From contig NIVC01001186.1 in NCBI GenBank assembly GCA_002269645.1, positions 185,293 through 249,292 on the forward strand: a DNA stretch of 64,000 bases, read 5' to 3'. The translations under genes were made by a program, and so were the position numbers. Below are positions 12,480 through 59,103 of the stretch, in pieces. The stretch's first letter is position 1. Every line of letters begins with the position of its first letter. The notes beneath the pieces are model-generated. The model was not told the origin of the DNA. It worked only from the letters and a program-made list of their open reading frames with translations, and did no database searches. This stretch comes from Macrostomum lignano (lineage: Eukaryota).

Positions 12480-13389
12480 AACGACCTCGAGCAGCAACGA
12501 GCAGCAACCAAGCAGCTAGCAGTGAGAGAGTTCAGAGAGGAGCGCAATAGGACCCACAACTAACCTCAGTGCACACCCAAATCAAGCGAAAATTTTACTG
12601 AATTAGGAAAATGTGAATAAAATTGCAAAGTGAAAATCTACGACTACGTGACTGATAGCAAAAGCAGTGAAACAAACAACACGCAATGAATAGAAAGGAG
12701 TATAAATGAGTGGAAAGTCGGACAGCTAACTGAAAACAGTCCAAATGAAAACTTAGCTGGCAGACGAGTCGACTTCTCCAGGCAGCTGTCCTGTTCGTCC
12801 CTCCTGAGTCCTGAATCCGGAGTGAGCACAGAGTCTGAAGCCTTGAGCACGATGAGAAGCAAAGACGACGACGAAGACGAGCAGAGGAACGCAGAGGTAA
12901 CGAAAGGCTTTTCCATGGTTCTCCACCGTCAAGAGGTGCCAAGCGGGCGGCCTTCCGGCCGGCAAAGAGAGAACCGGGGGGGGGGAGAGGCCCTCGAACT
13001 TAGTGTAAAAACTATGTTTCGGGGGCAAACCTTCCCCTATCAGAGTGGCTCTGGACCGACCACCCAGAGCACCTCCCTAAACAATATCAAGGTCAAAAAC
13101 CCGATGGGAACGAGAGTAACCATTCGGGTAGTCCACGCCTACCGGCGACAAAAGGATAACAAGACAAGAGGTAACGAAAGGCAGATTCGACGAAGACGAG
13201 CAGACGAACGCAGAGGTAACGAAGGCAGATTCGACTAAGACGAGCAGACGAACGCAGAGGTAACGAAAGGCAGATTCGACGAAGACGAGCAGACGAACGC
13301 AGAGGTAACGAAATCGATACGATGCGAGACGATAGAGTAAACGAGCCGAACGAAGGGTCACAAGCAGAAGCAGTGTAGTGAACGGGTTC

Positions 13390-30873: not shown

Positions 30874-39793
<8,920 letters not shown>

Positions 39794-39899
39794 ATATTCG
39801 TCTCTGACATTCAACACAGAAGACTTTTGATTGGATGGCTCACTTACGAGCGTATTTTTCCTGAGGAATATTTTCGCGCCTGCATTAAGCTGTAACTTC

Positions 39900-40557
39900 T
39901 AGGGGGCGCCAGCTACAGAGGGGGCGCCAGCTACAGAGGGGGCGCCAGCTACAGTGTGGGCGCCAGCTACAAAGTGGGCGCCAGCTACAGAGGGGGCGCC
40001 AGCTACAGAGTGGGCGCCAGCTACAAAGTGGGCGCCAGCTACAGAGGGGGCGCCAGCTACAGAGGGGGCGCCAGCTACAGTGTGGGCGCCAGCTACAAAG
40101 TGGGCGCCAGCTACAGAGGGGGCGCCAGCTACAGAGGGGGCGCCAGCTACAGTGTGGGCGCCAGCTACAAAGTGGGCGCCAGCTACAGAGGGGGCGCCAG
40201 CTACAGAGGGGTCGCCAGCTACAGGGAGGCGCCAGCTACAGAGGGGGCGCCAGCTACAGGGGGGCGCCAGCTACAGAGAGGGCGCCAGCTACAGAGGGGG
40301 CGCCAGCTACAGGGGGGCGCCAGCTACAGAGAGGGCGCCAGCTACAGAGGGGGCGCCAGCTACAGAGTGGGCGCCAGCTACAGAGGGGGCGCCAGCTACA
40401 GGGGGGCGCCAGCTACAGAGGGGGCGCCAGCTACAAAGGGGCGCCAGCTACAGAGTGGGCGCCAGCTACAGAGGGGGCGCCAGCTACAGAGGGGGCGCCA
40501 GCTACAAAGGGGGCGCCAGCTACAAAGGGGGCGCCAGCTACAGAGGGTTCGCCAGCT
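39900..40557. repeat. 17-19 bp GC-rich minisatellite (gggggcgccagctacaga), about 36 copies
   Basis: Direct repetition between MYCBPAP and TLR-A. Confidence 0.95.
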
Positions 40558-41091
40558 AATTGCTGTTCTAAATAAGTTTTAAATGTATCACCTAGCTATT
40601 CGCTATTACACTTACTGTCCCTCTAACTTAAGTTTCTGATAAATTATGAAAAGATACTGTAAATTACATATATGAATTGAAGATTACAAAAAATATAATG
40701 AAAACCAAATGAAAGTCAGATTTGATAAAGTATAGAGATCCAGGCGATCTATGCAGTGAATATAAACATAGGGCTCGTATCTTAACATAGCAACTTGGGG
40801 GCACAATGAATTAAGCTTTTATCTTGGCTAGAAACTTCAGCGTGACAAAAAAGGTGAAGCTACACCTCTCTTCAATGCATCGCATGAGAGTGTTTAGATA
40901 TAGAAGCAGCGAACTTCCGCTGATTTACATCTGACGCATAAATAAGCTTCGCGCACCTGGAACCTGCCAGGTGCCCCAAAGTTACAGTTAGCAAGATGCA
41001 AGCAGTTGTCTCTGTTTCTGCTTGGTAGAGCATTAGTTTGTAAAACTTACCGATTTTTTAAGCAACCCTGACTTAATAAGACAATCGGACA

Positions 41092-43988
41092 ATGCGGCAA
41101 CTGATTGTGTTGCTTTCAGTTTGCTGCGCCGTTTCGAGCAGAACTTCGCCTGTGCAGTCTTGCCGCTTCCCATCAAAATGCGACTGCACAATCGAAAGGA
41201 AAGATCCCTATCTCATGTGCGTGAAGATGGAGAACTGTCTCAATCAGGCTGACATGAACGCCATCGCTGCTTCAATCAATCCGAACGTTTGTCCCGTAAC
41301 CCATTTGAAAATTTCCTGCTCAAAAGAGTCCAAAGGCAAGGAAATTGAGATCCAATCGGATCTATTCAAGCACTCGAATTGGCAACACCTGAAAGAGCTC
41401 ACTTTCGGATCTCCAGTTGATTACGTCTTCAAAGAAACAAAGGTTTTAAAACACCTGAAGAAACTGCGGTACCTGGAGATGCAGTTTATGAACATCGTCA
41501 CTGACCTCGGTACACTGTCGGAGACAATGTGCTGCTCCGTCAACTTATCGGAATTGCACTTTAGAGGTGTCACGATAAAATCACGGGCATCAACTCTTGG
41601 TCGGAATTCATTCATTGGCTTTCGGTCTCTTAAAAAGGTGACCATTAATAGCTCTCCGTCGATGCTGAAGACAATCAAATACCAGTTCAATACAACTGCT
41701 CCAAGCTTTCTGTTCGAAATTTACGGCAATCTTCCTCGTGGAAACTTCTCCAGCATCAGCTTGACAAACACTGCTAACCGATCTGGCCTTCATTTGGGCT
41801 TGCACGGTGATGATCGTTCATTCCAGCTAGATGCCCCAGCTCAAATCGAAGGGTTCACATTGTCCACATTTTCCATGACTAACTACCATCTGGTGTCTGT
41901 CGGTGAGTCACCGTTTGCCGACTTCCAGCTGCAGACGATCGAGATTTCTTCTTCGCGATTGAATGAGAAGCTGTTAAAGAGGCTGCTGCGAGCTGCAAGC
42001 CGAGTCAAGGACCCCGCGCTCTTCAATAAACTCTCCGTCCAGTTCTCCCTGAGCAAGCCGGGATTCCCGTATGACGACTTCAATCGTCTGTGCGAGTCCT
42101 TGCCTTGGATAAGGGAAATATCCATCAGCCACTCACCGATTAGCTTGTCAGACCCAAACAAGCTGCTCAACTGCTCCCAGCTGAGAACACTGTCATTAAC
42201 CAACACAAAGTTAAATCTGCTGCCACCAAATGTTTTCAGTGGTCTACCCAAACTGAAAACTTTAGTCCTTACGAACTGCCATCTGTACGAGTTTCCCAAA
42301 GAAGCTCTTCGACAAACGCCCAATCTAGAGACGCTCATCATGGAGAAGAACAACAACATGGACGTCAAGGCTACCTCACTTCGAGGCATTCTCCCCAACT
42401 TGCGCTCTCTGGATTTATCCTACGCAAGCATATCTGCTGCACTTGTTGATGCTTTCATGGATCAGAAGAATCTGACCTACTTAAAGCTAAGCAACCTGCA
42501 TAACAACGCATGGTGCACTGTCGGCAAGACTTGGTTCCGTGGATGCGACAAGCTGACGAACCTGGACCTCTCGCAAAACGACATGCTGTCGAAGGCGCTG
42601 TGCCATGCAAACGGGTTCCTCGCACCGCTCAGACATCTTCAACACCTCAACTTGAGAAAGTGTTTAGTCGGCAGACAAACCGATGGAATCATAAAGTCAA
42701 TGCTGACGAATCTCACCTCACTGAGAACTCTTGACTTGGAAGGAAACGACATCGATAAAGTGAAACACATTCTGAGTGTCCGGATGCCCAATCTAACCAC
42801 CTTGAACCTCGCGAAGAACTCCTTCTCCGAATTTTCGTCAGACCTTTTCATTACGAGGACACCGAATCTCAAAGTGCTTAAACTTGCCGCCAACCCAATC
42901 GTGAGTCTGAGGCCTGCAGCTTTCAATCGAATGCCGGATCTCAGGGTGCTCTTCGGAGGTAACCAGTTCGTCTGCTCATGCGACTTGGTGAAGTTTACTG
43001 ACTGGATGAGACAGCAGTACCCGATCTACCAGATTGAGAACAAAGGTTCGTGGCTATCCAATGCAATGTGCAACAAGATGCCTAACGGGTCCCATCCAAT
43101 CAGCAATGTCATGCTGTTGGACTTCCGACTGTCCTGGTGGGACTGCTACAGCAGACGGCTGATTGCTGTGTTGTCCTCGGCGATCGGCGGACTGATGGTT
43201 GTGTTCGCGGTGAGCAGCGCGGTTTCGAGATACCGCTGGAAGCTCCGGTATGCGCTGCTAGCGTTCTGCATTCGGCACGGACTCGTGAGAGGGCGGAAGC
43301 TGCAGAGCGAATGGACCTACGAGTGAGTTTAAATATTGTGCTAATGTCGGATTTATTGGATTTAGGCTAATGTTGAGCTGGTAGATAGTCTGTTCCAAAA
43401 ACTTTGGTACGTTATGGAACGGTATGGAACCAATGCTTAATTGGCGAGTAATTTGATTGATACTTTGATGACCGCCGCAGCGCCTGCTTCATCTACGACG
43501 AGACGGACAGCTCGGTGTCCGAGTGGGTCGGCGACCTCGTCCTCAAGCTTGAGACGGACCTGCGGCTCCGCCTGTACGAAGCCGAGAGAGACGCGCCCGT
43601 CGGGTCCAACATGCTGGACGAGGCGGCCTCGGCCATCGACAAGAGCCGACACGCCGTGCTGGTGCTGAGCCGGGGCTTCCTGGAGAACAGGCTCAACTTG
43701 TACAGCGCACAGTGGAGCAGCGAATCGCTGTTTATGCGCCGCCGCTCTCTGGCCGTTCTCGTCATGAGGGAGAAGCTGAGCGAGTCCGAGCTGCGATTTC
43801 CGGAATGCAAGGTGCTGCATCGGCTGTACCGGATGTGCAAGCGGGACCGGATTGTAGACTGCAGCGGCTGTGGAGTCGGGAGCAACTCCGCGAACCGGCT
43901 GGGACTGCTGCTGTACGACGGCGCGGCCGTGTCGGGGCGGGCGCAGGAGCGTCGGGCTCAGGAGTCCGAGACCGAGTGGCTTCTCTAG
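41092..43988 (+). CDS. Toll-like receptor A (signal peptide, LRRs, LRRCT, TM, TIR); exons 41092-43322 and 43481-43988, 912 aa
   Basis: Hydrophobic N-terminus, LRRNT CRFPSKCDC, LxxLxLxxNxL repeats, LRRCT GNQFVCSCDLVKFTDW...C...C, TM LIAVLSSAIGGLMVVFAVSSAVS then RYRWKLRY. Phase-2 intron GA|gtgagt...ccgcag|C gives EWTYDACFIY; TIR with SEWV, LRL..RD..VG and AIDKSR..VLVLS..FL. Confidence 0.93.
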
Positions 43989-45367
43989 CTCGGGTGATTG
44001 AAATCGGTTTTGCGTCAGGATGGTTGAGATAGACGTCCTGCAAGGTCTTACGGCTCAATTCTTCGACGGAAGTCGCATGACTATATGGCTACTACTCATG
44101 AGAATCTTGTTTTAAGGGCAAAACGCGTTGTCTTCTTTTTTCCTCGGACGAATTCTTTTCTAGTAATAACTTTGAATCTAAACTGAGTCTAAACTAATTC
44201 TAAAATTGGTTTTGACCCATTCGAAAATTGCAAAACTGGTGGCAGAAATATTTTTTACGAAAAATCGGCTAAGTACCTAACATTGTTCTGGGAAATTAAA
44301 AATTTTTCAAATTGTTTCAATTTTTGCATTCACTGATTAAATTTGATTTAATAGTTTTTTTAGTTTCGTTAACTAATTAGACAATCCTATCAATACGTTT
44401 TTTAATTTCATAACCTTTTTTCTACGAGATATTTTTTTAAAATCAATAAATAATTATCTGCTTTAATTTTTACTCATGCATGTAATTGGAATGTGTGTGG
44501 ATATATATCCTACCATTTTAACTGGCCAAATTTTTGTAACAGCTTTAGTTATAAACCTGTGCAAAGAAGCTAATTACAAAAATAGATAAAATTAAATTTT
44601 ACATTAGATAGCTACTGAAATGATTTGACCTAAAGATAAATTTCTTTTAAGAGACAACTTTTTATAATTATTAAAATGTACATACGAGTCAAAGCATTCA
44701 AAAACGATGTCAGCAGTAAAAAACTTTGAAATTTCAGCGATAATAGATGAAATACGCTTGTAGTGTAACGCAAAATAGCTAGTTTTAAAAAAATTGTACA
44801 ATTTTCGGTATTTGTACAATTTACTTTACTCGTAGCAAAGTAATAGCCATTTTTTATTAGTTTAATAACCAAATGAAGTACGTACGAGCGTATTAGCTAG
44901 CTACAAAGTCGCAACAATTTAAAGTAGTCAGTTTAAAAATTAAACCTTTTTGTACTACTGTAATGACATTGTACTAGCTCGTAACAATTGGTTCAATTGC
45001 TGAGATGTCAACTTTTACGGGGGAATAGACTGGGGGCAGCAATTGTCTTGAGCTCTGCCATTCTGGATTAAGTCAAGTGCTCCTAAGCTCAAACTGGCTG
45101 CAATAGCTATATTAAATTGTCACAGTGTACGACTCTGTGCATTGGGTGTAGGCTAACGTGTTGCCGCAGTCGGACTCCCAAACACTACGCAGTTGCTCGT
45201 CCAGCCACTGAGGCTTATGTCAAAAGTGATAGACCCATTGGGCAGATGTGCAGCCGACAGCTCAGCCGCAGCTATTTGCGCGGCGCATCTGAAAGCTGCT
45301 GCGTACGGCTGTTCAGTCCAAAGACTGGGGGGTCGCCACACACCCTCAATTACCCCAGCTAATGCTG

Positions 45368-45494
45368 GCACCAAATTTACAGCTGGGTGAACTGAAGCAA
45401 TGCAGAGTTAAGTGCCGTGCTCAAGGACACAAATTGTTCCGAGTCTGACCTTATTCAGTATTGAGTCTGACGCTCTAACCATTAGGCTATAACC
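45368..45494 (-). mobile_element. tRNA-headed CORE-type SINE (duplicate of 52568 copy)
   Basis: Reverse complement of the 52568 SINE, within the duplicated TLR 3' flank. Confidence 0.65.
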
Positions 45495-45584
45495 TTTAGT
45501 AGAGATGGTTTGGGATCTTCCAGAAAGTAAAGGTTAGCTCGCAATTAATTCAAAATTTTTTTTTCAAAACGATCCCATCCAGCT

Positions 45585-48500
45585 CTAGTCGTCAGACAGA
45601 AGCGACTTCGTCCCTGCGGCCTCGGCACCACGCTCCTGCGACCGTCCCGACACGTCCGCGCCGTCGTACAGCAGCAGTCCCAGCCGGTTCGCGGAGTTGC
45701 TGCCGACTCCGCAGCCGCTGCAGTCTACAATCCGGTCCCGCTTGCACATCCGGTACAGCCGATGCAGCACCTTGCATTCCGGAAATCGCAGCTCGGACTC
45801 GCTCAGCTTCTCCCTCATGACGAGAACGGCCAGAGAGCGGCGGCGCATGAACAGCGACTCGCTGCTCCACTGTGCGCTGTACAAGTTGAGCCTGTTCTCC
45901 AGGAAGCCCCGGCTCAGCACCAGCACGGCTTGTCGGCTCTTGTCGATGGCCGAGGCCGCCTCGTCCAGCATGTTGGACCCGACGGGCGCGTCTCTCTCGG
46001 CTTCGTACAGGCGGAGCCGCAGGTCCGTCTCGAGCTTGAGGACAAGGTCGCCGACCCATTCGGACACCGAGCTGTCCGTCTCGTCGTAGATGAAGCAGGC
46101 GCTGCGGCGGTCATCAAAGTATCAATCAAATTACTGGCCAATTAAGCATTGGTTCCATACCGTCCAGGAGCCTAAAAGCTTTACTTCGCACCTACCATGT
46201 TTTATCATCCAAGTTCGTAGAGCTTACCAATTCAGTTGTACCAAAGTTTTTGGAACAGACCATCTACCAGCTCAACATTAGCCTAAATCCAATAAAGTCC
46301 ATTCTAAAGGGGAATGTTTTTCCATTGAAAGCTACTTGCACAATATCGAAACTCACTCGTAGGTCCATTCGCTCTGCAGCTTCCGCCCTCTCACGAGTCC
46401 GTGCCGAATGCAGAACGCTAGCAGCGCATACCGGAGCTTCCAGCGGTATCTCGAAACCGCGCTGCTCACCGCGAACACAACCATCAGTCCGCCGATCGCC
46501 GAGGACAACACAGCAATCAGCCGTCTGCTGTAGCAGTCCCACCAGGACAGTCGGAAGTCCAACAGCATGACATTGCTGATTGGATGGGACCCGTTAGGCA
46601 TCTTGTTGCACATTGCATTGGATAGCCACGAACCTTTGTTCTCAATCTGGTAGATCGGGTACTGCTGTCTCATCCAGTCAGTAAACTTCACCAAGTCGCA
46701 TGAGCAGACGAACTGGTTACCTCCGAAGAGCACCCTGAGATCCGGCATTCGATTGAAAGCTGCAGGCCTCAGACTCACGATTGGGTTGGCGGCAAGTTTA
46801 AGCACTTTGAGATTCGGTGTCCTCGTAATGAAAAGGTCTGACGAAAATTCGGAGAAGGAGTTCTTCGCGAGGTTCAAGGTGGTTAGATTGGGCATCCGGA
46901 CACTCAGAATGTGTTTCACTTTATCGATGTCGTTTCCTTCCAAGTCAAGAGTTCTCAGTGAGGTGAGATTCGTCAGCATTGACTTTATGATTCCATCGGT
47001 TTGTCTGCCGACTAAACACTTTCTCAAGTTGAGGTGTTGAAGATGTCTGAGCGGTGCGAGGAACCCGTTTGCATGGCACAGCGCCTTCGACAGCATGTCG
47101 TTTTGCGAGAGGTCCAGGTTCGTCAGCTTGTCGCATCCACGGAACCAAGTCTTGTCGACAGTGCACCATGCGTTGTTATGCAGGTTGCTTAGCTTTAAGT
47201 AGGTCAGATTCTTCTGATCCATGAAAGCATCAACAAGTGCAGCAGATATGCTTGCGTAGGACAAATCCAGAGAGCGCAAGTTGGGGAGAATGCCTCGAAG
47301 TGAGGTAGCCTTGACGTCCATGTTGTTGTTCTTCTCCATGATTAGCGTCTCTAGATTGGGCGTTTGTCGAAGAGCTTCTTTGGGAAACTCGTACAGATGG
47401 CAGTTGGTAAGGACTAAAGTTTTCAGTTTGGGTAGACCACTGAAAACATTTGGTGGCAGCAGATTTAACTTTGTGTTGGTTAATGACAGTGTTCTCAGCT
47501 GGGAGCAGTTGAGCAGCTTGTTTGGGTATGACAAGCTAATTGGTGAGTGGCTGATGGATATTTCCCTTATCCAAGGCAAGGACTCGCACAGACGATTGAA
47601 GTCGTCATACGGGAATCCCGGCTTGCTCAGGGAGAACTGGACGGAGAGTTTATTGAAGAGCGCGGGGTCCTTGACTCGGCTTGCAGCTCGCAGCAGCCTC
47701 TTCAACAGCTTCTCATTCAATCGCGAAGAAGAAATCTCGATCGTCTGCAGCTGGAAGTCGGCAAACGGTGACTCACCGACAGACACCAGATGGTAGTTAG
47801 TCATGGAAAATGAGGACAATGTGAACCCTTCGATTTGAGCTGGGGCATCTAGCTGGAATGAACGATCATCACCGTGCAAGCCCAAATGAAGGCCAGATCG
47901 GTTAGCAGTGTTTGTCAAGCTGATGCTGGAGAAGTTTCCATGAGGGAGATTGCCGTAAATTTCGAACTGAAAGCTTGGAGCAGTTGTATTAAATTGGTAT
48001 TTGATTGTCTTCAGCATCGACGGAGAGCTATTAATGGTCACCTTTTTAAGAGACCGAAAGCCAATGAATGAATTCCGACCAAGAGTTGATGCCCGTGATT
48101 TTATCGTGACACCTCTAAAGTACAATTCGGATAAGTTGACGGAGCAGCACATTGTCTCCGACAGTCTACCAAGGTCAGTGACGATGTTCATAAACTGCAT
48201 CTCCAGGTACCGCAGTTTCTTCAGGTGTTTTAAAACCTTTGTTTCTTTGAAGACGTAATTAACCGGAGATCCGAAAGTGAGCTCTTTCAGGTGTTGCCAA
48301 TTCGAGTGCTTGAATAGATCCGCTTGGATTTCAATTTCCCTGCCTTTGGATTCTTTTGAGCAGGAAATTTTCAAATGGGTTACGGGACAAACGTTCGGAT
48401 TGATTGAAGCAGCGATGGCGTTCATGTCAGCCTGATTGAGACAGTTCTCCATCTTCACGCACATGAGATAGGGATCTTTCCTTTCGATTGTGCAGTCGCA

Positions 48501-48587
48501 TTTTGTTGGGAAGCGGCAAGACTGCACAGGCGAAGTTCTGCTCGAAGCGGCGCAGCAAACTGAAAGCAACACAATCAGTTGCCACAT
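45585..48587 (-). CDS. Toll-like receptor B; exons 48587-46357 and 46101-45585, 915 aa
   Basis: Exon 1 differs from TLR-A at only 13 of 744 aa by my alignment; same intron position and phase; TIR exon ends GAEAAGTKSLLSDD*. Confidence 0.93.
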
Positions 48588-49327
48588 TGTCCGATTGGCC
48601 TAGTAAAATTAGTGGCTTTTTAATTCACGCTTATTTCAAGGCTGTCGGAATAGAAAGTTGGCTTTTTTATAGCCATTACTTTCGCGTTATTAGCAGACAC
48701 ACGGTGGTGCTGTGCAGACATGTATATGCATACATTTACGTCTAGTTCAAGGTTAATCGAGGGAGAATGTGTATTTGCGTCTAATTTCTAGCATAATTTT
48801 AGGCCCACAGTAGCAGAATAAATTGCGCACTTCGCTACTTAACAAGCTATACGCAGCTACCTTTGCATATGGCTGGCACAGATGACTAAAAATAAGCCTT
48901 CTAGGCCAATTTAAAAGTCAGGTTTCAGCTAAGTTGACGATTTTTTATAAATCGTTTCGATTGTTTAATGATTTTCTACAAACTTCTTGCAGCACTTCCT
49001 GCCTTATTCGAAATTGGCATACGCGGTCACGTGCTGTACCAAATTGCCCACAACAACATGGCAACTTTGATAGAAATCGATATGAAACTTTAAAATGGTA
49101 GAAAACATGAACGCTTAGTTATAAACAATAATCGGTTGCATTTGAACAGTATAGTAGTTGCGCTGCCTACGCATATGTTTAGGTGAAATTAACGCAAAAC
49201 GCATGACATGAGGTAATACTCGTAAACAACTTGTTTCATCGGATCGAGCATCGCTTCGCGCATTTATAAACTGTTTCTGCCCGTAGGCTAACTCTGTGCT
49301 ACATTGTTGGCTGGACTTTAGCGACGA

Positions 49328-52300
49328 ATGAATTGGTTAACTTGTCTGCTTTTTAGTTGCTTTCTGCTTCTCGTGGCTTCGGGAGCGGACGCCAACAACG
49401 CGGTACCTTGCAGCTTTCCTGAGAAATGCTCCTGCGAGTTGAGGAATGCCGGCACAAAACTCTGGTGCAAAGGCATGCAGAACTGCTTCAGTCAGGCTGG
49501 CATGGACGCACTTGGAGCTTCAATGAATCCTGTAAGTTGTCCAGTGAAAATGGTAACACTCAGCTGCAATAGGGAATCCGTTTGGCCGATAGTTGAGATC
49601 ACATCGGAGCTGTTTCGGCACGAGCAATGGCGGAGACTGGAAGAGTTGTACATCGGCACGTCGTGCAAATTTGTGTTTAGAGAGAAACGGGTCTTGTCGA
49701 ATTTACCAAACCTAAAGTCGTTTTCGCTGCGGAACAACGACTTATCTGCGAATCTCGGCGAGTTCTCCGAAATATTCTGCTGCCCGAAGGGACTGTCTGA
49801 GATTTTAATTGACAGCCTAGGAGCAGAACAAATGGGTACACGATTCGGACAGAGATCGTTTCTAAAGTTGAATGCGTTAAAAAAGTTCACCGTGATCCGA
49901 TCGCCAAAGCTCTTCGATCGATTAGAATTTGTGCTCAACACCAGCTCGCCGGCGTTCTCGTTCCACTGGCACGGCAAGTTGCCGCACTCCAATAAGGAAT
50001 TTTCTAGTCTGTTATTCACGAATCTGGCTAGCAGGAGCAGTCTCGAACTGCTGATTTCGGATGGCGCCACCCAGTTGGAGTTGGACTCGCCTGCTCAGCT
50101 CAGTGGCTTCGATTTCACCAGGCTGGACATCCAGAACACTCGGCTGTCGCGCATCGGAGACGCGCCATTCCGAAACTTCACACTTAAAGACATTTCCATA
50201 ACTGCCGCTGGACTAAATGAAATCATGCTGCCCCAGCTGCTGCGCGCAATCGCCAAAGTCAAGAATCCGCTAGCGGTGAGAACTCTGGCTCTGGAGTTTA
50301 ACTATAAAAAGCGCGGATTTCCGTACGATGAGTTCAACGCACTGTGCAAGGCTCTGCCACTGTTGCGTCGATTGTCATTAAGTCACTCGTCGGTGAGCTT
50401 TGGTCAGTCTGAGCAGTACTTCGACTGTCCTCAGCTATTCCTGCTGTCAATTACGAACTGCAACCTGCAGGACGAGGACATTCCACCGCGAGCATTCGAC
50501 AAATTGACTCGACTAGAAAACATACGGTTAATTAATAACCAATTGAGTACGGTGCCTAAGGACCTGCTCCGTAATTTGAGTCAAATCACCTACCTTGACC
50601 TCAGTCAGAATAGACAACTGAAATTGAAAGCATCTTCGTTTCGGGGCATTTTGCCCAGCCTGCAGACCCTGCGCCTGTCGCGGACGGGCTACACGGAGCC
50701 ACTCACTGATGCATTTGTTGATCAGTCAAATCTTACCGAGCTGCACCTCAATCAACTGGTAGAACTGAGATCCACACGCTGTCCGTTTAGGAAGACTTGG
50801 TTTAAAAACTGTTCTAAACTGAAAACACTTAACCTAGCTGGTGATCACTTTCTGAATTACGGAGAGTGCCATGGCGGTGACTTCTTTGATCCGTTGACTA
50901 GCTTGGAAAGTCTCTCCATAAGCTCCTGCGACTTTGGCCATCAGTCGGATGGAACTATCAAGGCTCTGCTGTCGAAACTCTCAACACTAAAAACATTAAT
51001 GGCTTCCGGCAACAAGCTGGCAAGACTTGAATTCATTTTGAACAGAAAGTTTGAAAATTTAAACCTTCTAGACGTCTCTTGGAATTCCTTCTCAAGCATT
51101 CCAGTGGACCTGATTGCCACAACAACCCCCGCACTGCGCAACCTGGAACTAATGGAGGTCCCTCTAGCCAACATAGATCCAAAAGCATTCGACAAACTGC
51201 CGAAGCTTCGTCTCAGGCTCGGTCGCAATCAATTCAGGTGCGCGTGCAACCTGATGCCATTCGCCGATTGGCTCAGAGAGCAGTGGCCCGTCTATCAGCT
51301 GGAAAGCAAAGGCGATTGGCTGCTCAACGCCATCTGCTACACAGCCTCGAACTCTACCAAGCGAGTGATCGACTTCCGCCTGTCCTGGTGGGACTGCTAC
51401 AGCCGACGCCTGATTTTTATTCTATCCGCATCGATTGGTGGCCTGCTGATTGTGTTTGTCCTGACCGCTCTGCTGTCGCGCTACCGGTGGAAGCTGCGCT
51501 ACACAATACTTGCCTTCGGCATTCGTAACGGAATTGTGAACAGGAAGCAGCAGAACGAATGGACTTATGAGTAAGTTGTGGAGCTCAATAAATACCAATA
51601 ATTGAACGACGGGCTGTTGGCGCACCCTGTGCCTCACACTACCACCGCTGAGGCAATCTTGCCCATTCCACTGACTCCCTCAGCACATACAATCGCTCCA
51701 ATACCGTACACAGGCAAACACTCACACACGCTAACACAGGGTGTACAGCGGCGCTGACTTTCTAATCGGTCAGGCATGCACAGTCTCTGTGCCTTGGGGC
51801 TTGGCCCTCGTGGCTTTGTATACTTGAAATCTCAATTTGCTACTGAACATTTCCAAGCCATTGTTCCTGAATGAAGCCAGCCCTGAGCTCTGATCCCACA
51901 CCTGACTGAATCCACTCCCACCTCCGCAGCGCCTGCTTCATCTACGACGAGACGGACAGCACGGTTTCCGAGTGGGTCGGCGACCTCGTCCTCAAGCTCG
52001 AGACGGACCTGCGGCTCCGCCTGTACGAAGCCGAGAGAGACGCGCCCGTCGGGTCCAACATGCTGGACGAGGCGGCCTCCGCCATCGACAAGAGCCGACA
52101 CGCCGTGCTGGTGCTGAGCCGGGGCTTCCTGGAGAACAGACTCAACCTGTACAGCGCACAGTGGAGCAGCGAGTCGCTGTTCATGCGCCGCCGCTCTCTG
52201 GCCGTTCTCGTCATGAGGGAGAAGCTGAGCGAGTCCGAGCTGCGATTTCCGGAATGCAAGGTGCTACATCGGCTGTACCGGATGTGCAAGCGGGACCGGA

Positions 52301-52476
52301 TTGTAGACTGCAGCGGCTGCGGAGTCGGGAGCAACTCCGCGAACCGGCTGGGACTGCTGCTGTACGACGGCGCGGACGTGTCGGGACGGGCGCAGCAGCG
52401 TCGGGTTCAGGAGTCCGAGACCGAGTCTGATGGTGCCGAGGCCGCAGGGACGAAGTCGCTTCTGTCTGACGACTAG
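49328..52476 (+). CDS. Toll-like receptor C; exons 49328-51570 and 51930-52476, 929 aa
   Basis: Signal peptide, LRRNT CSFPEKCSC, LRRs, LRRCT GRNQFRCACNLMPFADW, TM LIFILSASIGGLLIVFVLTALLS then RYRWKLRY; same phase-2 intron before the TIR exon. Confidence 0.93.
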
Positions 52477-52567
52477 AGCTGGATGGGATCGTTTTGAAAA
52501 AATTTTTTTTGAATTAATTGCGAGCTAACCTTTACTTTCTGGAAGATCCCAAACCATCTCTACTAAA

Positions 52568-52700
52568 GGTTGTAGCCTAATGGTTAGAGCGTCAGACTCA
52601 CTACTGAATAAGGTCAGACTCGGAACCATTTGTGTCCTTGAGCAAGACACTCAACTCTGCATTGCTTCAGTTCACCCAGCTGTAAAGTGGGTGCCAGCAT
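52568..52700 (+). mobile_element. tRNA-headed CORE-type SINE (3' extent uncertain)
   Basis: A-box gtagcctaatggttagagcg, then tgtgtccttgagcaagacactcaactctgcattgcttcagttcacccagctgtaaagtggg, which aligns by eye with the MIR/CORE domain (tgtgaccttgggcaagtcacttaacctctctgtgcctcagtttcctcatctgtaaaatggg). Confidence 0.68.
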
Positions 52701-53939
52701 TAGCTGGGGTAATTGAGGGTGTGTGTGTGGCGACCCCCCAGTCCTTGGACTGAACAGCCGTACGCAGCCTTCAGATGCGCCGCGCAATAGCTGCGGCTGA
52801 GCTGTCGGTTGCACATCTGCCCAATGGGTCTATCACTTTTGACATAAGCCTCGTCAGTGGCTGGACGAGCAACTGCGTAGTGTTTGGGAGTCCGACTGCG
52901 GCAACACGTTAGCCTACACCCAATGCACAGAGTCGTACACTGTGACAATTTAATGTATAGCTATTGCAGCCAGTTTGAGCTTAGAAGCAGTTGACTTAAT
53001 CCAGAGTGGCAGAGCTCAAGACAATTGCTGCCCACAGTCTATGGCCAAAAACTGTGACAGGTGAACAAAGATCTTTGGAGCATTAACTTTGTCCTCTCGA
53101 TTCTGCTGAAGGCTTAACATCTCTCTCTAACCTACAAATCAGTAACAATATGAGCGCTTGCAAGATGAAACTAGCGACACTAGCTATGAAACGGCCCTGG
53201 CCGAGCTGGGTGACTCAAAACAAGCCTCGGTGCCCAAATAAAGACCGATGTTCGCTATTCATTTTCTTGAGCCACACTAAATTCACTTTTAATGCATTAA
53301 ATTTGATCTAATGTAATTGCATACTCCTACAAGTGACAAAGAAGACAAATAATTGAGTCACACTAACATCAATCGTGTTTTATTCACTAGAGTCCTTTGT
53401 CGCATCTGCAGGTACTCAGTTTAAACAGTTTTAATATTTATTATTTGTTAATTTCGGCTATCAATTACACGAACTCGATCGTCCTTGATCTCACTGGCCA
53501 GTCACGTGGCAAGAGGGGTTCAATAAAATTGCTACAGTACCTCCTGGCTTAGCAGTTTATAGTCAGAGAGGCAAGAGCAGCGGAGAAACCCGGAAATGAC
53601 AGGAAGACTAAAAATGATTTTGAATTATTGCGATTTGGAAATAAACAGGTTTAAACATGGTTATCAGTCAGTAGTGGGGGGAAGTTAAGTTAAATCGCTT
53701 TGAACTTTTATAATGAGCTTGATGCGGTTTTATGCTAGCAACTTCCTTTTTGTTAATATTGTTAAAATTGGACGCTTAAAATCGGCCTTCAAATAATTTC
53801 TTTCCAAGAGACATCCATATAATCTAACTTTGCCAATAGTGTTCTAATGAATGCATAGCTTTTGGTTCAATAGACCCCACCCCTGTCAAGGTAGTTCGAA
53901 ACCTCAACCCCAGAGTCGCTCTGATTGGCTGGTGAGCAA

Positions 53940-56900
53940 TTAAAGTTCGTCCTTGGCCGCAGCATCGGCGGGCAATTTTTCCATGAAAGTCTTGACGCCA
54001 GCCTCCGTGATGGGCGCCTCAGCATAGTCCTGGCTCTTCTTGCCGTCACTAAACAGCATGAAGGTTGGGAAGCCTTCGACTTTCTGGTCCTCGCACAGCT
54101 CTGCGGAATAGATGAGGTTTTTAAGGTTGAAAATCCTGCTCTACTGAGTGTCTACTCATCTACTCTAATGAGTGCTTACTCATCTACTCTAATTAGTGTC
54201 TACTCATCTACTCTAATGAGTGCCTACTCATCTACTCTAATGAGTGCCTACTCATCTACTCTAATGAGTGCCTACTCATCTACTCTAATGAGTGTCTACT
54301 CATCTACTCTAATGAGTGCCTACTCATCTACTCTAATGAGTGTCTACTCATCTACTCTACTGAGTGCCTACTCATCTACTCTAATGAGTGCCTACTCATC
54401 TACTCTAATGAGTGCCTACTCATCTACTCTACTGAGTGCCTACTCATCTACTCTAATGAGTGCCTACTCATCTACTCTACTGAGTGCCTACTCATCTACT
54501 CTAATGAGTGCCTACTCATCTACTCTACTGAGTGCCTACTCATCTACTCTACTGAGTGCCTACTCATCTACTCTAATGAGTGTCTACTCATCTACTCTAA
54601 TGAGTGTCTACTCATCTACTCTAATGAGTGTCTACTCATCTACTCTAATGAGTGTCTACTCATCTACTCTAATGAGTGTCTACTCATCTACTCTAATCAC
54701 CCACGCAATGAACCCCCAAGCTCACTCTCGTTAGCCTTGACATCGCAGTTGACTGCCGCCAAGACTTTGCCCTGCGCTCCAACCAGACCTTCGGCCGCTT
54801 TGTCGAACGCGGGCTTGGCCTGCTGGCAGTGCGGGCACCAAGGCGCGTAGAACATCACCAGGACGTACTTGTTAGACTTGATTGACTCGTCGAACTGCTC
54901 AGAGCCCTCCAAGTAGGTCACATGCTTCATCTTGTCCTCGGGCTTCTCAGCTTGCCCACCAGCGGCCGATTCTTCTTTGCCGCTGTCTCCCGGCTTCTTC
55001 TCTTCTTCCACCGGAGTGGGCGGCACCTTCTCTTTAGGCGGGTTGCTGATGAAATCCAACAGCGGTTTGGCCTCAATTTCGTCCTCGAACTCCGCCCACA
55101 TTTCGCGCTTCTTCATCAGTCGGATAGTGGGGTAGCCTTCCACTTTCTCGTCTTCGCAGAGCTCTGTAATATTATGTTATGGTAACAGTGGTGGCGACTT
55201 TAAAGACAGTGGTTGGTAAAACATCAAAGAAGCAAATACAGTGTCGGTAAACATCAAAGAGCCATCAGTGTCGGCAGAGATCAAAGAAACAAATACAGTG
55301 TCGGTAAACATCAAAGAACCACCAGTGTCGGCAGAGATCAAAGAAAAAAGCACAGTGTCGGTAAACATCAAAGAGCCATCTGTGTCGGCAGAGATCAAAG
55401 AAGCAAGCACAGTGTCGGCAGAGATCAAAGAAGCAAGCACAGTGTCGGCAGAGATCAAAGAAACAAACACAGTGTCGGCAGAGATCAAAGAACTTGTCCC
55501 AAATGTCAACAATCCACTCACTCTGGTTGTCCTTCTGGTCGCAGTTGATCGCCGCCAAGATATTTCCTGCCACCGGTTTGGCTTCCAAATCCTTGGCCGC
55601 CTTCTCGAACTTCGGTTTGCTGTCCTTGCAGTGCGGGCACCAGGGAGCATAGTAAAAGACCAGAACGAACTCATGGCTATTTAGGATCTCTGAGTAGTTG
55701 CCGGCGCCCAGGTAGGTCACGCCGGCCATGCTGCGATGGTTAAAACGGATTGAAAAAATTTAAATAATCTGACTAGCTATACTAGGTCCCGATCAAGTAC
55801 TGAAAGTAGTGCGCATTGTAAAAACTAGTATTTATTATGATTATATTAATAAACGATTACAACGTACTGTCCACCTAAGGCAATGTCGTTAACACACCGA
55901 AGACAATGTCGGTAATACACCGAAGACAATATCGGTAATACACCGAAGACAATATCGGTAATACACCGAAGACAATGTCGATAATACACTAAAGACAATG
56001 TCGGTAATACACTAAAGACAATGTCAATAACACATCGAAGACAATGTCGGTAATACACCGAAGACAATGTCGGTAATACACCGAAGACAATGTCGATAAC
56101 ACACCAACGACAATGTCGGTAACACACCGAAGACAATGTCGATAACACACCAACGACAATGTCGGTAACACACCGAAGACAATGTCGATAACACACCAAC
56201 GACAATGTCGGTAACACACCGAGGACAATGTCGATAACACACCAACGACAATGTCGGTAACACACCGAGGACAATGTCGATAACACATCGAAGACAATGT
56301 CGGTAGAACACGGAAGACAATGTCGATAACACACCAACGACAATGTAGATAACACACCAACGACAATGTCGATAACACACCAATGACAATGTCGGTAACA
56401 CACCGAGGACAATGTCGATAACACATCGAAGACAATGTCGGTAGAACACGGAAGACAATGTCGATAACACACCAACGACAATGTCGATAACACACCAACG
56501 ACAATGTCGATAACACACCAACGACAATGTCGGTAACACACCGAAGACGATGTCGGTAACACACCAAAGACAATGTCGGTAATACAGCAAAGATAGTGTC
56601 GATAACACATCGAAGACAATGTCGGTAGCACACGGAAGACACTGTCGGTAACACACCGAAGACAATGTCGGTAATACAGCAAAGATAGTGTCGGTAACAC
56701 ACCAAAGACAATGTCGGTAACACACCGAAGACACTGTCGGTAACACACCGAAGACAATGTCGGTAGCACACGGAAGACAGTGTCGGTAACACACCAAAGA
56801 CAATGTCGGTAATACAGCAAAGATAGTGTCGGTAACACACCAAAGACAATGTCGGTAACACACCGAAGACAATGTCGGTAACACACCAAAGACAATGTCG

Positions 56901-59103
56901 GTAACACACCAAAGACAATGTCGGTAACACACCGAAGACAATGTCGGTAACACACCGAAGACAATGTCGGTAACACACCAAAGACAATGTCGGTAACACA
57001 CCAAAGACAATGTCGGTAACACACCGAAGACAGTGTCGGTAACACACCAAAGACAATGTCGGTAACACACCAAAGACAATGTCGGTAATACAGCAAAGAT
57101 AGTGTCGATAACATATCGAAGACAATTTCGGTAGCACACGGAAGACAGTGTCGGTAACACACCAAAGACAATGTCGGTAACACACCAAAGACAATGTCGG
57201 TAACACACCGAAGACAGTGTCGGTAACACACCAAAGACAATGTCGGTAACACACCAAAGACAATGTCGGTAATACAGCAAAGATAGTGTCGATAACATAT
57301 CGAAGACAATTTCGGTAGCACACGGAAGACAGTGTCGGTAACACACCAAAGACAATGTCGGTAACACACCAAAGACAATGTCGGTAACACACCGAAGACA
57401 GTGTCGGTAACACACCAAAGACAATTTCGGTAGCACACGGAAGACAATGTCGGTAACACACCAAAGACAATGTCGGTAATACAGCAAAGATAGTGTCGAT
57501 AACATATCGAAGACAATTTCGGTAGCACACGGAAGACAGTGTCGGTAACACACCAAAGACAATGTCGGTAACACACCAAAGACAATGTCGGTAACACACC
57601 GAAGACAGTGTCGGTAACACACCAAAGACAATGTCGGTAATACACCGAAGACACTGTCGGTAACACACCGAAGACACTGTCGGTAACACACCGAAGACAC
57701 TGTCGGTAACACACCGAAGACACTGTCGGTAACACACCAAAGACAATGTCGGTAACACACCGAAGACAGTGTCGGTAACACACCAAAGACAATGTCGGTA
57801 ACACACCAAAGACAATGTCGGTAACACACCAAAGACAATGTCGGTAATACAGCAAAGACAATGTCGGTAATACAGCAAAGACACTGTCGGTAACACACCG
57901 AAGACAATGTCGGTAACACACCGAAGACAATGTCGATAACACACCAACGACAATGTCGATAACACACCGAAGACAATGTCGATAACACACCAACGACAAT
58001 GTCGGTAACACACCGAGGACAATGTCGATAACACACCAACGACAATGTCGGTAACACACCGAGGACAATGTCGGTAGCACACGGAAGACAATGTCGGTAA
58101 CACACCGAAGACAATGTCGATAACACACCAACGACAATGTCGGTAACACACCGAGGACAATGTCGATAACACACCAACGACAATGTCGGTAACACACCGT
58201 AAACAGCAATTAGGAGAGCAGCAACTCACAAGGTGTCGGGCTCCGAGTCTTGGTCGTCCTTCTCGCTGCCAGTCGAAGACGACGGCGGCCGTTTCTCGCC
58301 TTCCTTTGGCGGATTCTTCATGAATTCGATGAGCGCCTTCTCGCTGTTGTCATCCTCAAAGTCCTGGATGAGCTTGCCTTTGCTGTAGAACTTGATAGTC
58401 GGATAGCCCTCGATTTTCTCTTTGGCGCACAGGTCTGGCGAGGTTTTGGTGGGCAGTGAGGGTGAGAGCGTAGAGTGGATAGATAGAGACGGAAGTGTAG
58501 AGTCGTGAGATTGTTAGAGTTGGTAGATAGAGACAGTAGATAGGTAGATATTAGCTTGTAGAAGCATGAGAGAGTAGATTGGGTAGATAGAGACGGCAGA
58601 TAAGTAGATAGTAGAAGCGTGAGAGAGTAGATTGGGTAGATAGAGACGGCAGATAGGTAGATAGTAGAAGCGTGAGAGAGTAGATTGGGTAGATAGAGAC
58701 GGTAAATAGAAGAAGTGTCAGAGAATAGAGTAGGAGTGAGAGAACGCACATGTCACTGCCCGAAGTCCAATGTACGGTAACTACCGATATGTAACGAAAA
58801 GAACTTATTAGCCAAAGCATGACACGGTAAATTACCCTGATTCTTCTTTTCATCGCAGTCGACCATGCCCATAACTTTGCCAGGCTCTTTGGTCACCTCC
58901 TTGGCTGCGTTATTGAACTTCGGCTTGGCCTCGACGCAGTGCGGGCACCAGGGCGCGTAGAACATCACCAGGGAGCCATCGTTGGTGTCGATAGTCTTGT
59001 GAAAGCTGGCCGCGTCGAGTTCAAGAGCCTCGGCGCTGACGGAATGCGCCAGAATGGGCAGCAGCAGCAGGATGGCTAGCAGTGACTGATTTTCCAACAG
59101 CAT
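53940..59103 (-). CDS. Protein disulfide isomerase, PDIA5(PDIR)-like, three CPHC thioredoxin domains + KDEL; exons 59103-58836, 58434-58230, 55730-55522, 55163-54726, 54100-53940; 426 aa
   Basis: Signal peptide, three FY(Y)APWCPHC motifs, each followed by (V/I)(D/N)C...N(Q/E)xLC..EK(I/V)EG(Y/F)PT, and C-terminal AAKDEL*. All four GT-AG junctions are in phase and the total of 1281 nt is divisible by 3. Confidence 0.92.
54137..54697. repeat. 24-bp minisatellite (tactcatctactctaatgagtgcc), about 23 copies, PDI intron 4
   Basis: Direct repetition. Confidence 0.95.
55200..55495. repeat. 27/30-bp minisatellite (cagtgtcggcagagatcaaagaa.../cagtgtcggtaaacatcaaagag...), PDI intron 3
   Basis: Direct repetition. 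Confidence 0.9.
55880..58200. repeat. 23-bp minisatellite (gacaatgtcggtaacacaccgaa), about 100 copies, PDI intron 2
   Basis: Direct repetition; accounts for the three 720-790 aa minus-strand ORFs. Confidence 0.97.
58540..58705. repeat. About 51-bp purine-rich tandem repeat, about 3 copies, PDI intron 1
   Basis: gagagagtagattgggtagatagagacggcagata(a/g)gtagatagtagaagcgt repeated. Confidence 0.8.

What the first reader, a model, noticed from the sequence alone, without database searches (positions are those of the whole stretch)
43481..53042. Sensor/signalling module swapping: divergent ectodomains share a near-identical TIR exon, and TLR-B's TIR is an A/C mosaic
Seen: the TLR-C ectodomain is far diverged from A/B at protein level and its intron is unrelated, yet all three TIR exons are nearly identical in DNA. 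B shares exon 1 and intron homology with A, but shares the TIR tail (GAEAAGTKSLLSDD) and about 560 bp of 3' flank, including a SINE, with C (45024-45600 versus 52476-53042, inverted). Diagnostic sites in B are mostly A-type in the 5' half (tcggtg, tcggcc, aggctcaacttg) and mostly C-type from gagtcgctgttc onward (ggctgc, gcggac, tcggga), placing a switch near 45859-45883; a few sites disagree. C also carries A's RRxQESETE segment, which is a 30-nt deletion in B. The intron sits exactly at the TM/TIR boundary (Y-D of TIR box 1). Inference: ectopic recombination or gene conversion between inverted copies homogenises or shuffles TIR modules while sensors diversify, a possible receptor-diversification mechanism.
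Basis: partly seen in the sequence, partly recalled or inferred. Interest (0 to 1): 0.86.

Follow-up and report, generated by a model that had tools for sequence, protein, structure and literature searches.

The report
Three flatworm TLRs share TIR exon
Three clustered Toll-like-receptor-type genes of the flatworm Macrostomum lignano have very different sensor halves but an almost identical signalling (TIR) exon, the known signature of DNA copying between neighbouring gene copies; the bigger surprise is that flatworms were reported to have no such receptors.

Summary
The window holds three intact two-exon genes with an LRR ectodomain, one TM helix and a TIR domain: A (+), B (-) and C (+). They come from Macrostomum lignano.

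Confirmed:
- A/B and C ectodomain exons are 41.7% identical in protein, with saturated dS.
- The three TIR exons differ at 11-13 of 472 nt.
- The jump falls within about 10 nt of the splice acceptor (permutation p<=2e-4).
- B and C also share 560 bp of non-coding 3' flank. A and B share exon 1 and the intron.
- B lacks 30 nt that A and C have.

Selection alone therefore cannot explain the pattern. A non-reciprocal DNA transfer (ectopic gene conversion or segmental copying) must have occurred.

Not supported:
- The claim that B's TIR exon is itself an A/C mosaic.
- The SINE call.

A simpler history fits: one TIR+flank transfer between the B ancestor and C, an inverted duplication of B giving a tail-truncated A, then a 30-nt deletion in B.

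Conversion that keeps TIR regions alike while ectodomains diverge is already known for vertebrate TLR1/TLR6 and avian TLR2A/B. The less expected point is that published surveys report no TLRs in M. lignano or any other flatworm.

The parts
41092..43322 (+). TLR-A exon 1: signal peptide, LRR ectodomain, LRRCT-like Cys motif, TM helix and juxtamembrane region. It ends in TAC GA| (phase 2).
   Evidence: ORF; Pfam LRR_8 9e-30; donor GTGAGT.
43323..43480 (+). TLR-A intron (158 nt). Homologous to the B intron except for two indels.
43481..43988 (+). TLR-A TIR exon. Homology to B and C ends at 43977-43984, and the new C-terminus is ...ESETEWLL*.
   Evidence: No significant similarity lies beyond that point.
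43985..45024 (.). AT-rich unique spacer between the tail-to-tail A and B copies. It has no homology to anything else in the window.
45025..45584 (-). TLR-B 3' flank, shared with the C flank (3.2% substitutions, 6 indels). It contains a tRNA-like string that was not confirmed as a SINE.
45585..46101 (-). TLR-B TIR exon. It has the C-type tail GAEAAGTKSLLSDD* and lacks 30 nt (RxQESETESD) that A and C carry.
46102..46356 (-). TLR-B intron (255 nt).
46357..48587 (-). TLR-B exon 1. It differs from A exon 1 at 26 of 2231 nt (13 aa).
48588..49327 (.). 740-bp head-to-head intergenic region between B and C. A/B homology stops 10-19 nt upstream of the ATG, so the A and B promoters are unrelated.
49328..51570 (+). 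TLR-C exon 1. Collinear with A and B but only 41.7% identical in aa, with saturated dS.
51571..51929 (+). TLR-C intron (359 nt), unrelated to the A/B intron except for the last ~10 nt. Positions 51725-51799 match 38985-39058 at 80%.
51930..52476 (+). TLR-C TIR exon, the longest version of the tail.
52477..53042 (+). TLR-C 3' flank, shared with B.

Best explanation
A, B and C are three intact TLR-type receptor genes (LRR ectodomain, one TM helix, a divergent TIR domain) of Macrostomum lignano.

The A/B-type and C-type ectodomain exons are ancient paralogs. A 1.1-kb block was copied non-reciprocally between the ancestor of B and C. The block runs from about 10 nt upstream of the splice acceptor, through the TIR exon, to 560 bp past the stop codon. 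The copying was ectopic gene conversion or a segmental replacement. Two different sensors therefore carry the same signalling module.

At about the same neutral age (2-3% divergence), B was duplicated in inverted orientation. The copy runs from just upstream of its ATG to a breakpoint in the acidic tail (43977-43984). This produced A, which has a new stop codon (WLL*). B later lost 30 nt of the tail. On this history B looks 'A-like on the left, C-like on the right' without any crossover inside the TIR exon.

What is shown and what is inferred:
- Shown: the block structure, the divergence levels and the intactness of the genes.
- Inferred: the order and direction of the events, and the idea that a uniform TIR surface serves shared adaptor binding.
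- Confidence is about 0.9 that a non-reciprocal DNA transfer explains the shared TIR exon, and about 0.55 for this particular three-step history.
For: - The identity profile steps from 0.45-0.75 in exon 1 to 0.97-0.99 in the TIR exon (p<=2e-4). Exon 1 dS is >1.2 even in the TM-coding end.
- 13 of the 18 TIR differences are synonymous, and B and C share non-coding flank. Constraint alone therefore cannot explain the identity.
- Block limits come from self-BLAST and alignments.
- A has no significant similarity to B or C beyond 43977, and the spacer has no inverted homology.
- Neutral-type divergences are all similar: A-B four-fold sites 2.1% (7/334); B-C flank 3.2% (18/556); TIR cores 2.3-2.8%.
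- The TIR cores are star-like: 7 AB|C, 6 BC|A and 5 B-private sites. No breakpoint is supported.
- The genes are intact with canonical splice sites. The same EWTY|DACF junction is used in UniProt models of M. lignano.
- The same C-B-A arrangement is traversed by an independent gene model, A0A1I8HEG2.
Against: - Both ends of the A/B block sit close to the gene ends (10-19 nt before the ATG; about 10 nt before A's own stop). That is a coincidence for a random duplication. It would fit better if A and B were older copies homogenised only where homology persists.
- A-B divergence in the TIR core (11/472) is about twice that of exon 1 (26/2231).
- The second version of the cluster, P0144, carries a C-position TIR with A-type states at sites 253 and ~479. 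Sites 218 and 253 then show all four combinations. That suggests at least one further exchange or a recurrent mutation.
- No outgroup is available, so direction and timing are untested.
Confidence: 0.6

Rival explanations
1. A and B were duplicated with an A-type TIR. Later a conversion or recombination event with C replaced the 3' half of B's TIR exon plus its 3' flank. B's TIR would then be a true A/C mosaic with a switch near 45859-45883.
For: - In the 5' half B matches A at 5 of 6 informative sites. In the 3' half it matches C at 5 of 7.
- B-C differences are 8 in the first 230 nt against 4 in the last 242.
- B shares its tail and flank with C.
Against: - The pattern is not significant: max-chi2 p=0.28, Fisher 0.10, 3SEQ-like p=0.23.
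- A's TIR is as close to C (13 differences) as B's is (12). An earlier, separate A/B-C homogenisation is therefore still required, making this history one event longer.
- The B-C flank divergence (3.2%) is not lower than A-B neutral divergence (2.1%), although a post-duplication event predicts that it should be.
Confidence: 0.25
2. Ongoing concerted evolution. The TIR exons of all copies, including homeologous clusters from the recent genome duplication, exchange short tracts repeatedly. Tracts are limited to the exon because the flanking introns are non-homologous. The star-like pattern is then a steady state, not one event.
For: - The three copies are equidistant.
- GC3 jumps from 0.60-0.62 in exon 1 to 0.86-0.88 in the TIR exon at the exon boundary, as expected under GC-biased conversion.
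- The C-position TIR in P0144 mixes A-type and C-type states, and sites 218 and 253 show four gametes.
- The homology edge lies exactly at the acceptor.
Against: - Only one incompatible site pair exists, and it was read from an antisense protein translation.
- The GENECONV-like run tests are non-significant.
- Neighbouring thioredoxin-domain ORFs also have a fairly high GC3 of 0.72-0.77.
- The 560-bp flank shared only by B and C looks like a single larger event.
Confidence: 0.35
3. Strong purifying selection or codon bias on the TIR domain alone keeps the exons alike, with no DNA transfer.
For: The TIR is the most constrained part of TLRs, and its GC3 is high.
Against: - Four-fold sites differ by only 5-6% in the TIR exon, whereas exon 1 is saturated.
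- 560 bp of non-coding flank is 97% identical in substitutions between B and C.
- The step in identity is abrupt, within about 10 nt.
Confidence: 0.01
4. Assembly artefact: collapsed or chimeric repeats created the shared segments.
For: M. lignano is a hidden polyploid with a repeat-rich, hard-to-assemble genome (PMC10468722, PMC12869490).
Against: - Each TIR copy has private substitutions that are mostly synonymous third-position changes, not random errors.
- The reading frames and splice sites are intact.
- A UniProt gene model built on a non-identical sequence traverses the same C-B-A order and orientation.
Confidence: 0.04

Closest known systems
Gene conversion between mammalian TLR1 and TLR6 (Kruithof et al. 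2007, PMC2077338)
   Same: Tandem TLR paralogs keep a C-terminal region that includes the TIR domain nearly identical by non-allelic conversion. Meanwhile the N-terminal ligand-binding LRRs diverge.
   Different: - In mammals the genes are intronless in the coding region, and the tract also covers LRR16-19, the C-terminal cap and the TM domain. Here the tract starts exactly at an intron/exon junction and excludes the TM domain.
- In mammals recurrence is proven by paralog-versus-ortholog trees in nine species. Here no ortholog is available.
- Here the ectodomains are far more diverged (42% aa).
Avian TLR1A/TLR1B and TLR2A/TLR2B conversion, and the Bos taurus TLR1/6 tract that extends ~200 bp into the 3'UTR (Huang et al. 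2011, PMC3125219)
   Same: The conversion covers the C-terminal TIR region, and in one case it runs into non-coding 3' sequence, like the B/C flank here.
   Different: The flank tract here is longer (560 bp) and is shared by only two of the three copies. The copies here are in inverted orientation.
Arm-to-arm gene conversion in palindromes, such as the human Y-chromosome ampliconic palindromes (from my own knowledge, not checked here)
   Same: A and B form a 2.9-kb inverted repeat with a 1.6-kb spacer. B and C carry 1.1-kb inverted arms around a 5.8-kb spacer. Geometries like these are known to support intrachromosomal conversion and inversion.
   Different: The scale is tiny, the arms are 2-3% diverged, and no evidence of inversion polymorphism was obtainable.
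Single-cysteine-cluster (V-type) TLRs, e.g. the vertebrate TLR7/8/13/22 group and invertebrate TLRs
   Same: The architecture is the same. The best full-length hits are TLR7/TLR13 at 22-28% identity. The TIR is closest to insect, fish tlr8a, oyster, echinoderm and amphioxus TLR TIRs at 25-36% identity.
   Different: The TIR is very divergent. Pfam TIR scores 20.8 bits against a cut-off of 21.3. Box 3 (FW) is absent, the box 2 proline is shifted, and a long acidic C-terminal tail is present.

Membership tests
Toll-like receptor (LRR-TM-TIR type I receptor) | [quoted passage not shown] | tested here: met
   Pfam LRR_8 scores 9e-30 for A and 3e-21 for C, with LRR_4 and LRR_5 hits as well. Hydrophobic N-termini MRQLIVLLSVCCAVSS and MNWLTCLLFSCFLLLVASG are read directly.
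Toll-like receptor (LRR-TM-TIR type I receptor) | C-terminal LRR cap (CxC...C motif) followed by a single transmembrane helix | tested here: inconclusive
   The motif GNQFVCSCDLVKFTDWM...C...C and the hydrophobic stretch LIAVLSSAIGGLMVVFAVSSAV are visible in the sequence. No Pfam LRRCT hit was returned and no TM predictor was run.
Toll-like receptor (LRR-TM-TIR type I receptor) | Cytoplasmic TIR domain | tested here: met
   - phmmer against PDB: TLR2 TIR 5.4e-6, then TLR7, TLR6, MAL, TLR10 and TLR1.
- Pfam TIR scores 20.8 bits, just under the 21.3 cut-off, E 3.7e-4.
- The best library hits are TLRs or TIR proteins.
- In the AF2 model the core has pLDDT 77-81. All top Foldseek PDB hits are TIR domains with probability 1.0 and TM up to 0.61.
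- Caveat: the model's alignment consisted of TLRs.
Toll-like receptor (LRR-TM-TIR type I receptor) | Conserved TIR boxes 1, 2 and 3 | tested here: inconclusive
   Box 1 YDACFIY is present. Box 2 ERDAPVG is present, with the proline shifted by one position. The box 3 FW position reads LY (alignment A4).
Toll-like receptor (LRR-TM-TIR type I receptor) | Signals through TIR adaptors (MyD88 and others) in immunity or development | not testable with these tools
   No expression or interaction data are available, and the rest of the genome could not be searched.
Non-allelic (ectopic) gene conversion between paralogs | A tract of near identity with sharp limits inside otherwise diverged paralogs, which includes synonymous and non-coding sites | tested here: met
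   (p<=2e-4).
Non-allelic (ectopic) gene conversion between paralogs | Within the tract, paralogs within a species are more alike than orthologs between species | not testable with these tools
   No Macrostomum ortholog could be retrieved. There was no flatworm hit other than M. lignano fragments, and the contig look-ups were empty.
   Within the window, max-chi2 gives p=0.28 and the 3SEQ-like test p=0.23. One four-gamete pair (sites 218 and 253) appears only when the P0144 version of C is added.
tRNA-derived SINE in the shared 3' flank | tRNA-related head recognised by tRNA or RNA-family models, and multiple dispersed copies | tested here: not met
   ARAGORN finds 0 genes. Rfam has no tRNA or SINE hit at E<=1. 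The window holds no further copy. Only an A-box-like string, TAGCCTAATGGTTAGAGC, is seen by eye.

The most novel reading that the evidence does not exclude
These would be the first bona fide TLR-architecture receptors recognised in Platyhelminthes, a phylum stated to have lost TLRs. They would form a lineage-specific cluster whose single, highly divergent TIR module is kept uniform by continuing conversion among inverted copies, and among homeologous clusters from the recent genome duplication. The 1.1-kb inverted B/C arms could also flip the 5.8-kb segment that carries both ectodomain exons.
Probability: 0.3. Interest if true: 0.65.

Novelty: new member of a known kind. Interest (0 to 1): 0.48.

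Why it matters
The evolutionary mechanism is the textbook one for clustered immune receptors, so on its own it adds a new phylum to a known pattern.

It is a clean example. The tract edge coincides with an intron, so the exon behaves as a portable signalling cassette.

The more consequential point is taxonomic. Comparative surveys list M. lignano and all other flatworms as lacking TLRs (PMC8609888, PMC7958881). Here there are three intact LRR-TM-TIR genes under purifying selection. Their TIR falls just below the Pfam threshold, and their public gene models are fragmented or chimeric, which probably explains why they were missed.

If they are expressed and they signal, the 'TLR loss in Platyhelminthes' scenario needs revision. 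M. lignano is transgenic-tractable, so it would become a place to test what a minimal, divergent Toll pathway does in a regenerating animal.

Tried and rejected
- Intra-exon mosaic of B. I tested it with max-chi2, Fisher, Mann-Whitney, a GENECONV-like run test and a 3SEQ-like exact test. All were non-significant.
- Extension of A's homology past 43977. The apparent match 'GGCTTCT..CTAG' versus 'CGCTTCT..GACTAG' scores no better than shuffles, so I rejected it.
- An older conversion reaching into the TM-coding end of exon 1. That part has higher aa identity (60%), but its dS is still >1.2, so I rejected it.
- SINE identification. ARAGORN, Rfam and a window self-search found nothing.
- Other genomic copies or assemblies. 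Exact-protein contig look-ups for P0001, the C exon 1 ORF and P0144 all came back empty.
- Homology searches. The word-indexed search with the TIR found only the M. lignano fragment.
- Structure prediction. The single-sequence AlphaFold model of the TIR was useless (pLDDT 41.7). I replaced it with an alignment-based model.
- Polarity of TIR substitutions. S>W changes number 11 of 18. That is uninformative, because 88% of third positions are already G/C.

Full report
WHAT IS THERE

The region holds three two-exon genes.
- A is on the + strand: exon 1 41092-43322, TIR exon 43481-43988.
- B is on the - strand: exon 1 48587-46357, TIR exon 46101-45585.
- C is on the + strand: exon 1 49328-51570, TIR exon 51930-52476.

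A and B lie tail-to-tail. B and C lie head-to-head, 740 bp apart. Each gene has a GT-AG, phase-2 intron inside the Asp codon of TIR box 1 (EWTY|DACFIY). The predicted proteins are 912, 915 and 929 aa. tblastn finds no fourth copy in the window.

A 190-aa UniProt fragment of Macrostomum lignano (A0A1I8HD87) matches A, including the splice junction. The window is therefore from that flatworm.

ARE THEY TLRs?

- The ectodomains hit LRR families strongly (LRR_8 at 9e-30).
- The best full-length relatives are vertebrate TLR7/13 and arthropod LRR proteins, at 22-28% identity.
- The cytoplasmic domain is a divergent TIR:
  - Pfam TIR scores 20.8 bits against a cut-off of 21.3.
  - phmmer against PDB gives TLR2 TIR at 5e-6, then TLR7, TLR6, MAL, TLR10 and TLR1.
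  - An exhaustive phmmer over 1.84 billion representatives gives only 23 hits at E<=1e-3. The ten best non-self hits I looked up were TLRs or TIR proteins of insect, fish, oyster, echinoderm and amphioxus, at 25-36% identity.
  - An AlphaFold model built on a TLR alignment has pLDDT 77-81 in the core. It retrieves only TIR domains at the top of a PDB fold search.
- Box 1 is intact, box 2 is partly intact, and box 3 is not conserved.

CHECK OF THE OBSERVATION

Exon 1:
- A-B differ at 26 of 2231 nt, with dS 0.02-0.026.
- A or B versus C is 41.7% identical in aa and 51% in nt. dS is saturated along the whole exon, including the more conserved TM-coding end (dS >1.2).

TIR exon:
- The 472-nt ungapped cores differ at 11 (A-B), 13 (A-C) and 12 (B-C) sites. 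Of the 18 variable sites, 13 are synonymous.
- Identity steps from 0.45-0.75 to 0.97-0.99 at the exon boundary.
- A Sawyer-type fragment score is 3.5 times the maximum of 5000 site permutations.
- Homology between the A/B-type and C-type genes begins about 10 nt upstream of the acceptor. The rest of the C intron is unrelated.

Flanks and tail:
- B and C share the tail GAEAAGTKSLLSDD* and a further 560 bp of flank (18 substitutions in 556 nt, plus 6 indels).
- A's similarity to both ends at 43977-43984 and does not resume.
- B lacks 30 nt (RxQESETESD) that A and C have.

The 'SINE' could not be confirmed.

THE MOSAIC CLAIM

- B groups with A at sites 32, 37, 151, 211, 218, 337 and 467.
- B groups with C at sites 70, 244, 253, 391, 447 and 457.
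- B has 5 private sites.

With 13 informative sites the pattern is not beyond chance. Max-chi2 permutation gives p=0.28, Fisher at the chosen break 0.10, Mann-Whitney 0.23, GENECONV-like runs are non-significant, and the 3SEQ-like exact test gives p=0.23. The three cores are simply equidistant.

The structural chimerism of B is real: its intron is like A's and its flank is like C's. It does not require a switch inside the exon.

MOST LIKELY HISTORY

1. The A/B-type and C-type genes are old paralogs.
2. A 1.1-kb block (acceptor, TIR exon, 3' flank) was copied non-reciprocally between the B ancestor and C.
3. B was duplicated in inverted orientation, from 10-19 nt upstream of its ATG to a point in the tail. 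This gave A, which has an unrelated 3' flank and a new stop codon.
4. B lost 30 nt.

Neutral-type divergences are all about 2-3%: A-B four-fold sites 2.1%, B-C flank 3.2%, TIR cores 2.3-2.8%. Steps 2 and 3 are therefore of similar age.

A reciprocal crossover between the inverted B and C TIR exons would swap flanks rather than duplicate them. The shared flank therefore needs conversion or duplication.

It needs one more event, but it is not excluded.

HINTS OF CONTINUING EXCHANGE

- GC3 rises from 0.60-0.62 in exon 1 to 0.86-0.88 in the TIR exon, exactly at the exon boundary. This is what GC-biased conversion would produce. The evidence is weak, because neighbouring ORFs reach 0.72-0.77.
- A second UniProt entry, A0A1I8HEG2 (P0144, 1670 aa), is a chimeric gene model. 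It runs on the window's minus strand from 54059 to 39075. It reads the C TIR exon and C exon 1 antisense, B in sense (correctly spliced), then the A TIR exon and A exon 1 antisense.
- That model shows the same C-B-A arrangement on a non-identical sequence. Its B and its A TIR match the window. Its C-position TIR carries A/B-type states at sites 32 and 37, the C-type state at 218, and A-type states at 253 and ~479.
- Sites 218 and 253 then show all four combinations among A, B, C and C'. This requires one recurrent mutation or one more conversion.
- M. lignano is a hidden polyploid with a recent genome duplication (PMC10468722, PMC12869490). C' may therefore be a homeolog or a haplotype.

COMPARISON WITH WHAT IS KNOWN

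Gene conversion that keeps the TM/TIR part of tandem TLR paralogs alike while ectodomains diverge is documented for three cases:
- mammalian TLR1/TLR6 (PMC2077338);
- avian TLR1A/B and TLR2A/B;
- one tract that runs ~200 bp into a 3'UTR (PMC3125219).

This locus is a further example. It has a tract edge at an intron and far more diverged sensors. It conserves a signalling module; it is not a demonstrated diversification mechanism.

What is less expected is the host. The metazoan TLR survey lists 0 TLRs for M. lignano and concludes that TLRs are absent from Platyhelminthes (PMC8609888). A planarian immunity review says the same (PMC7958881). The sub-threshold TIR score and the fragmented or chimeric public gene models are a plausible reason these genes were missed.

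VERDICT

- The core inference, non-reciprocal sharing of the TIR exon, is sound.
- The specific 'B is an A/C mosaic' claim and the SINE call are unsupported.
- The mechanism is of a known kind, so interest is moderate. It is raised by the apparent contradiction with the reported absence of TLRs in flatworms.

Noticed in passing
window 41092-52476: Published surveys report no TLRs in M. lignano or any other flatworm (PMC8609888, PMC7958881). These three genes nevertheless have the full LRR-TM-TIR architecture, and their pattern of differences (13 of 18 TIR differences synonymous; A-B exon 1 dN/dS about 0.3-0.4) fits purifying selection. The TIR scores 20.8 bits against the Pfam cut-off of 21.3, which may be why they were missed.
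   Followed up: partly
window 39075-54059, minus strand: UniProt A0A1I8HEG2 (1670 aa, 'TIR domain-containing protein') is a chimeric gene model. It reads TLR-C and TLR-A antisense and TLR-B in sense. Its C-position TIR differs from the window's C at sites 32, 37, 253 and ~479, always towards the A-type state.
   Followed up: yes
window 43481-43988, 45585-46101, 51930-52476: Third-position GC jumps from 0.60-0.62 in exon 1 to 0.86-0.88 in the TIR exon of all three genes, exactly at the exon boundary.
   Followed up: partly
window 41073-41091 and 48588-48606: A/B homology begins only 10-19 nt upstream of the ATG, next to an AG (TAATAAG|ACAATCGGACAATG and TTTTACTAG|GCCAATCGGACAATG). The two promoters are therefore unrelated. 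The AG could be an SL trans-splice acceptor, since trans-splicing is common in this species (PMC8629364).
   Followed up: no
window 51725-51799 and 38985-39058: A 75-bp stretch of the TLR-C intron matches a sequence 12.7 kb upstream, in inverted orientation, at 80%. It is probably a fragment of a dispersed repeat.
   Followed up: no
window 7027-12497, minus strand: Two long ORFs carry Pao/BEL retrotransposon domains: DUF1759 gag-like, Peptidase_A17, RVT_1, integrase and DUF5641. This looks like a largely intact LTR retrotransposon.
   Followed up: partly
window 54697-55729, minus strand: Two thioredoxin-domain ORFs (CPHC active site), probably exons of a PDI-like gene. A 30/57-nt tandem repeat at 55223-55492 overlaps the second ORF.
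   Followed up: no
window 38437-38742; 39901-40558; 54139-54697; 55872-58199: Large tandem arrays surround the TLR cluster: (TAC)x102, an 18-mer x37, a 24-mer x23 and a 23-mer x101. They produce long spurious ORFs in all frames.
   Followed up: no
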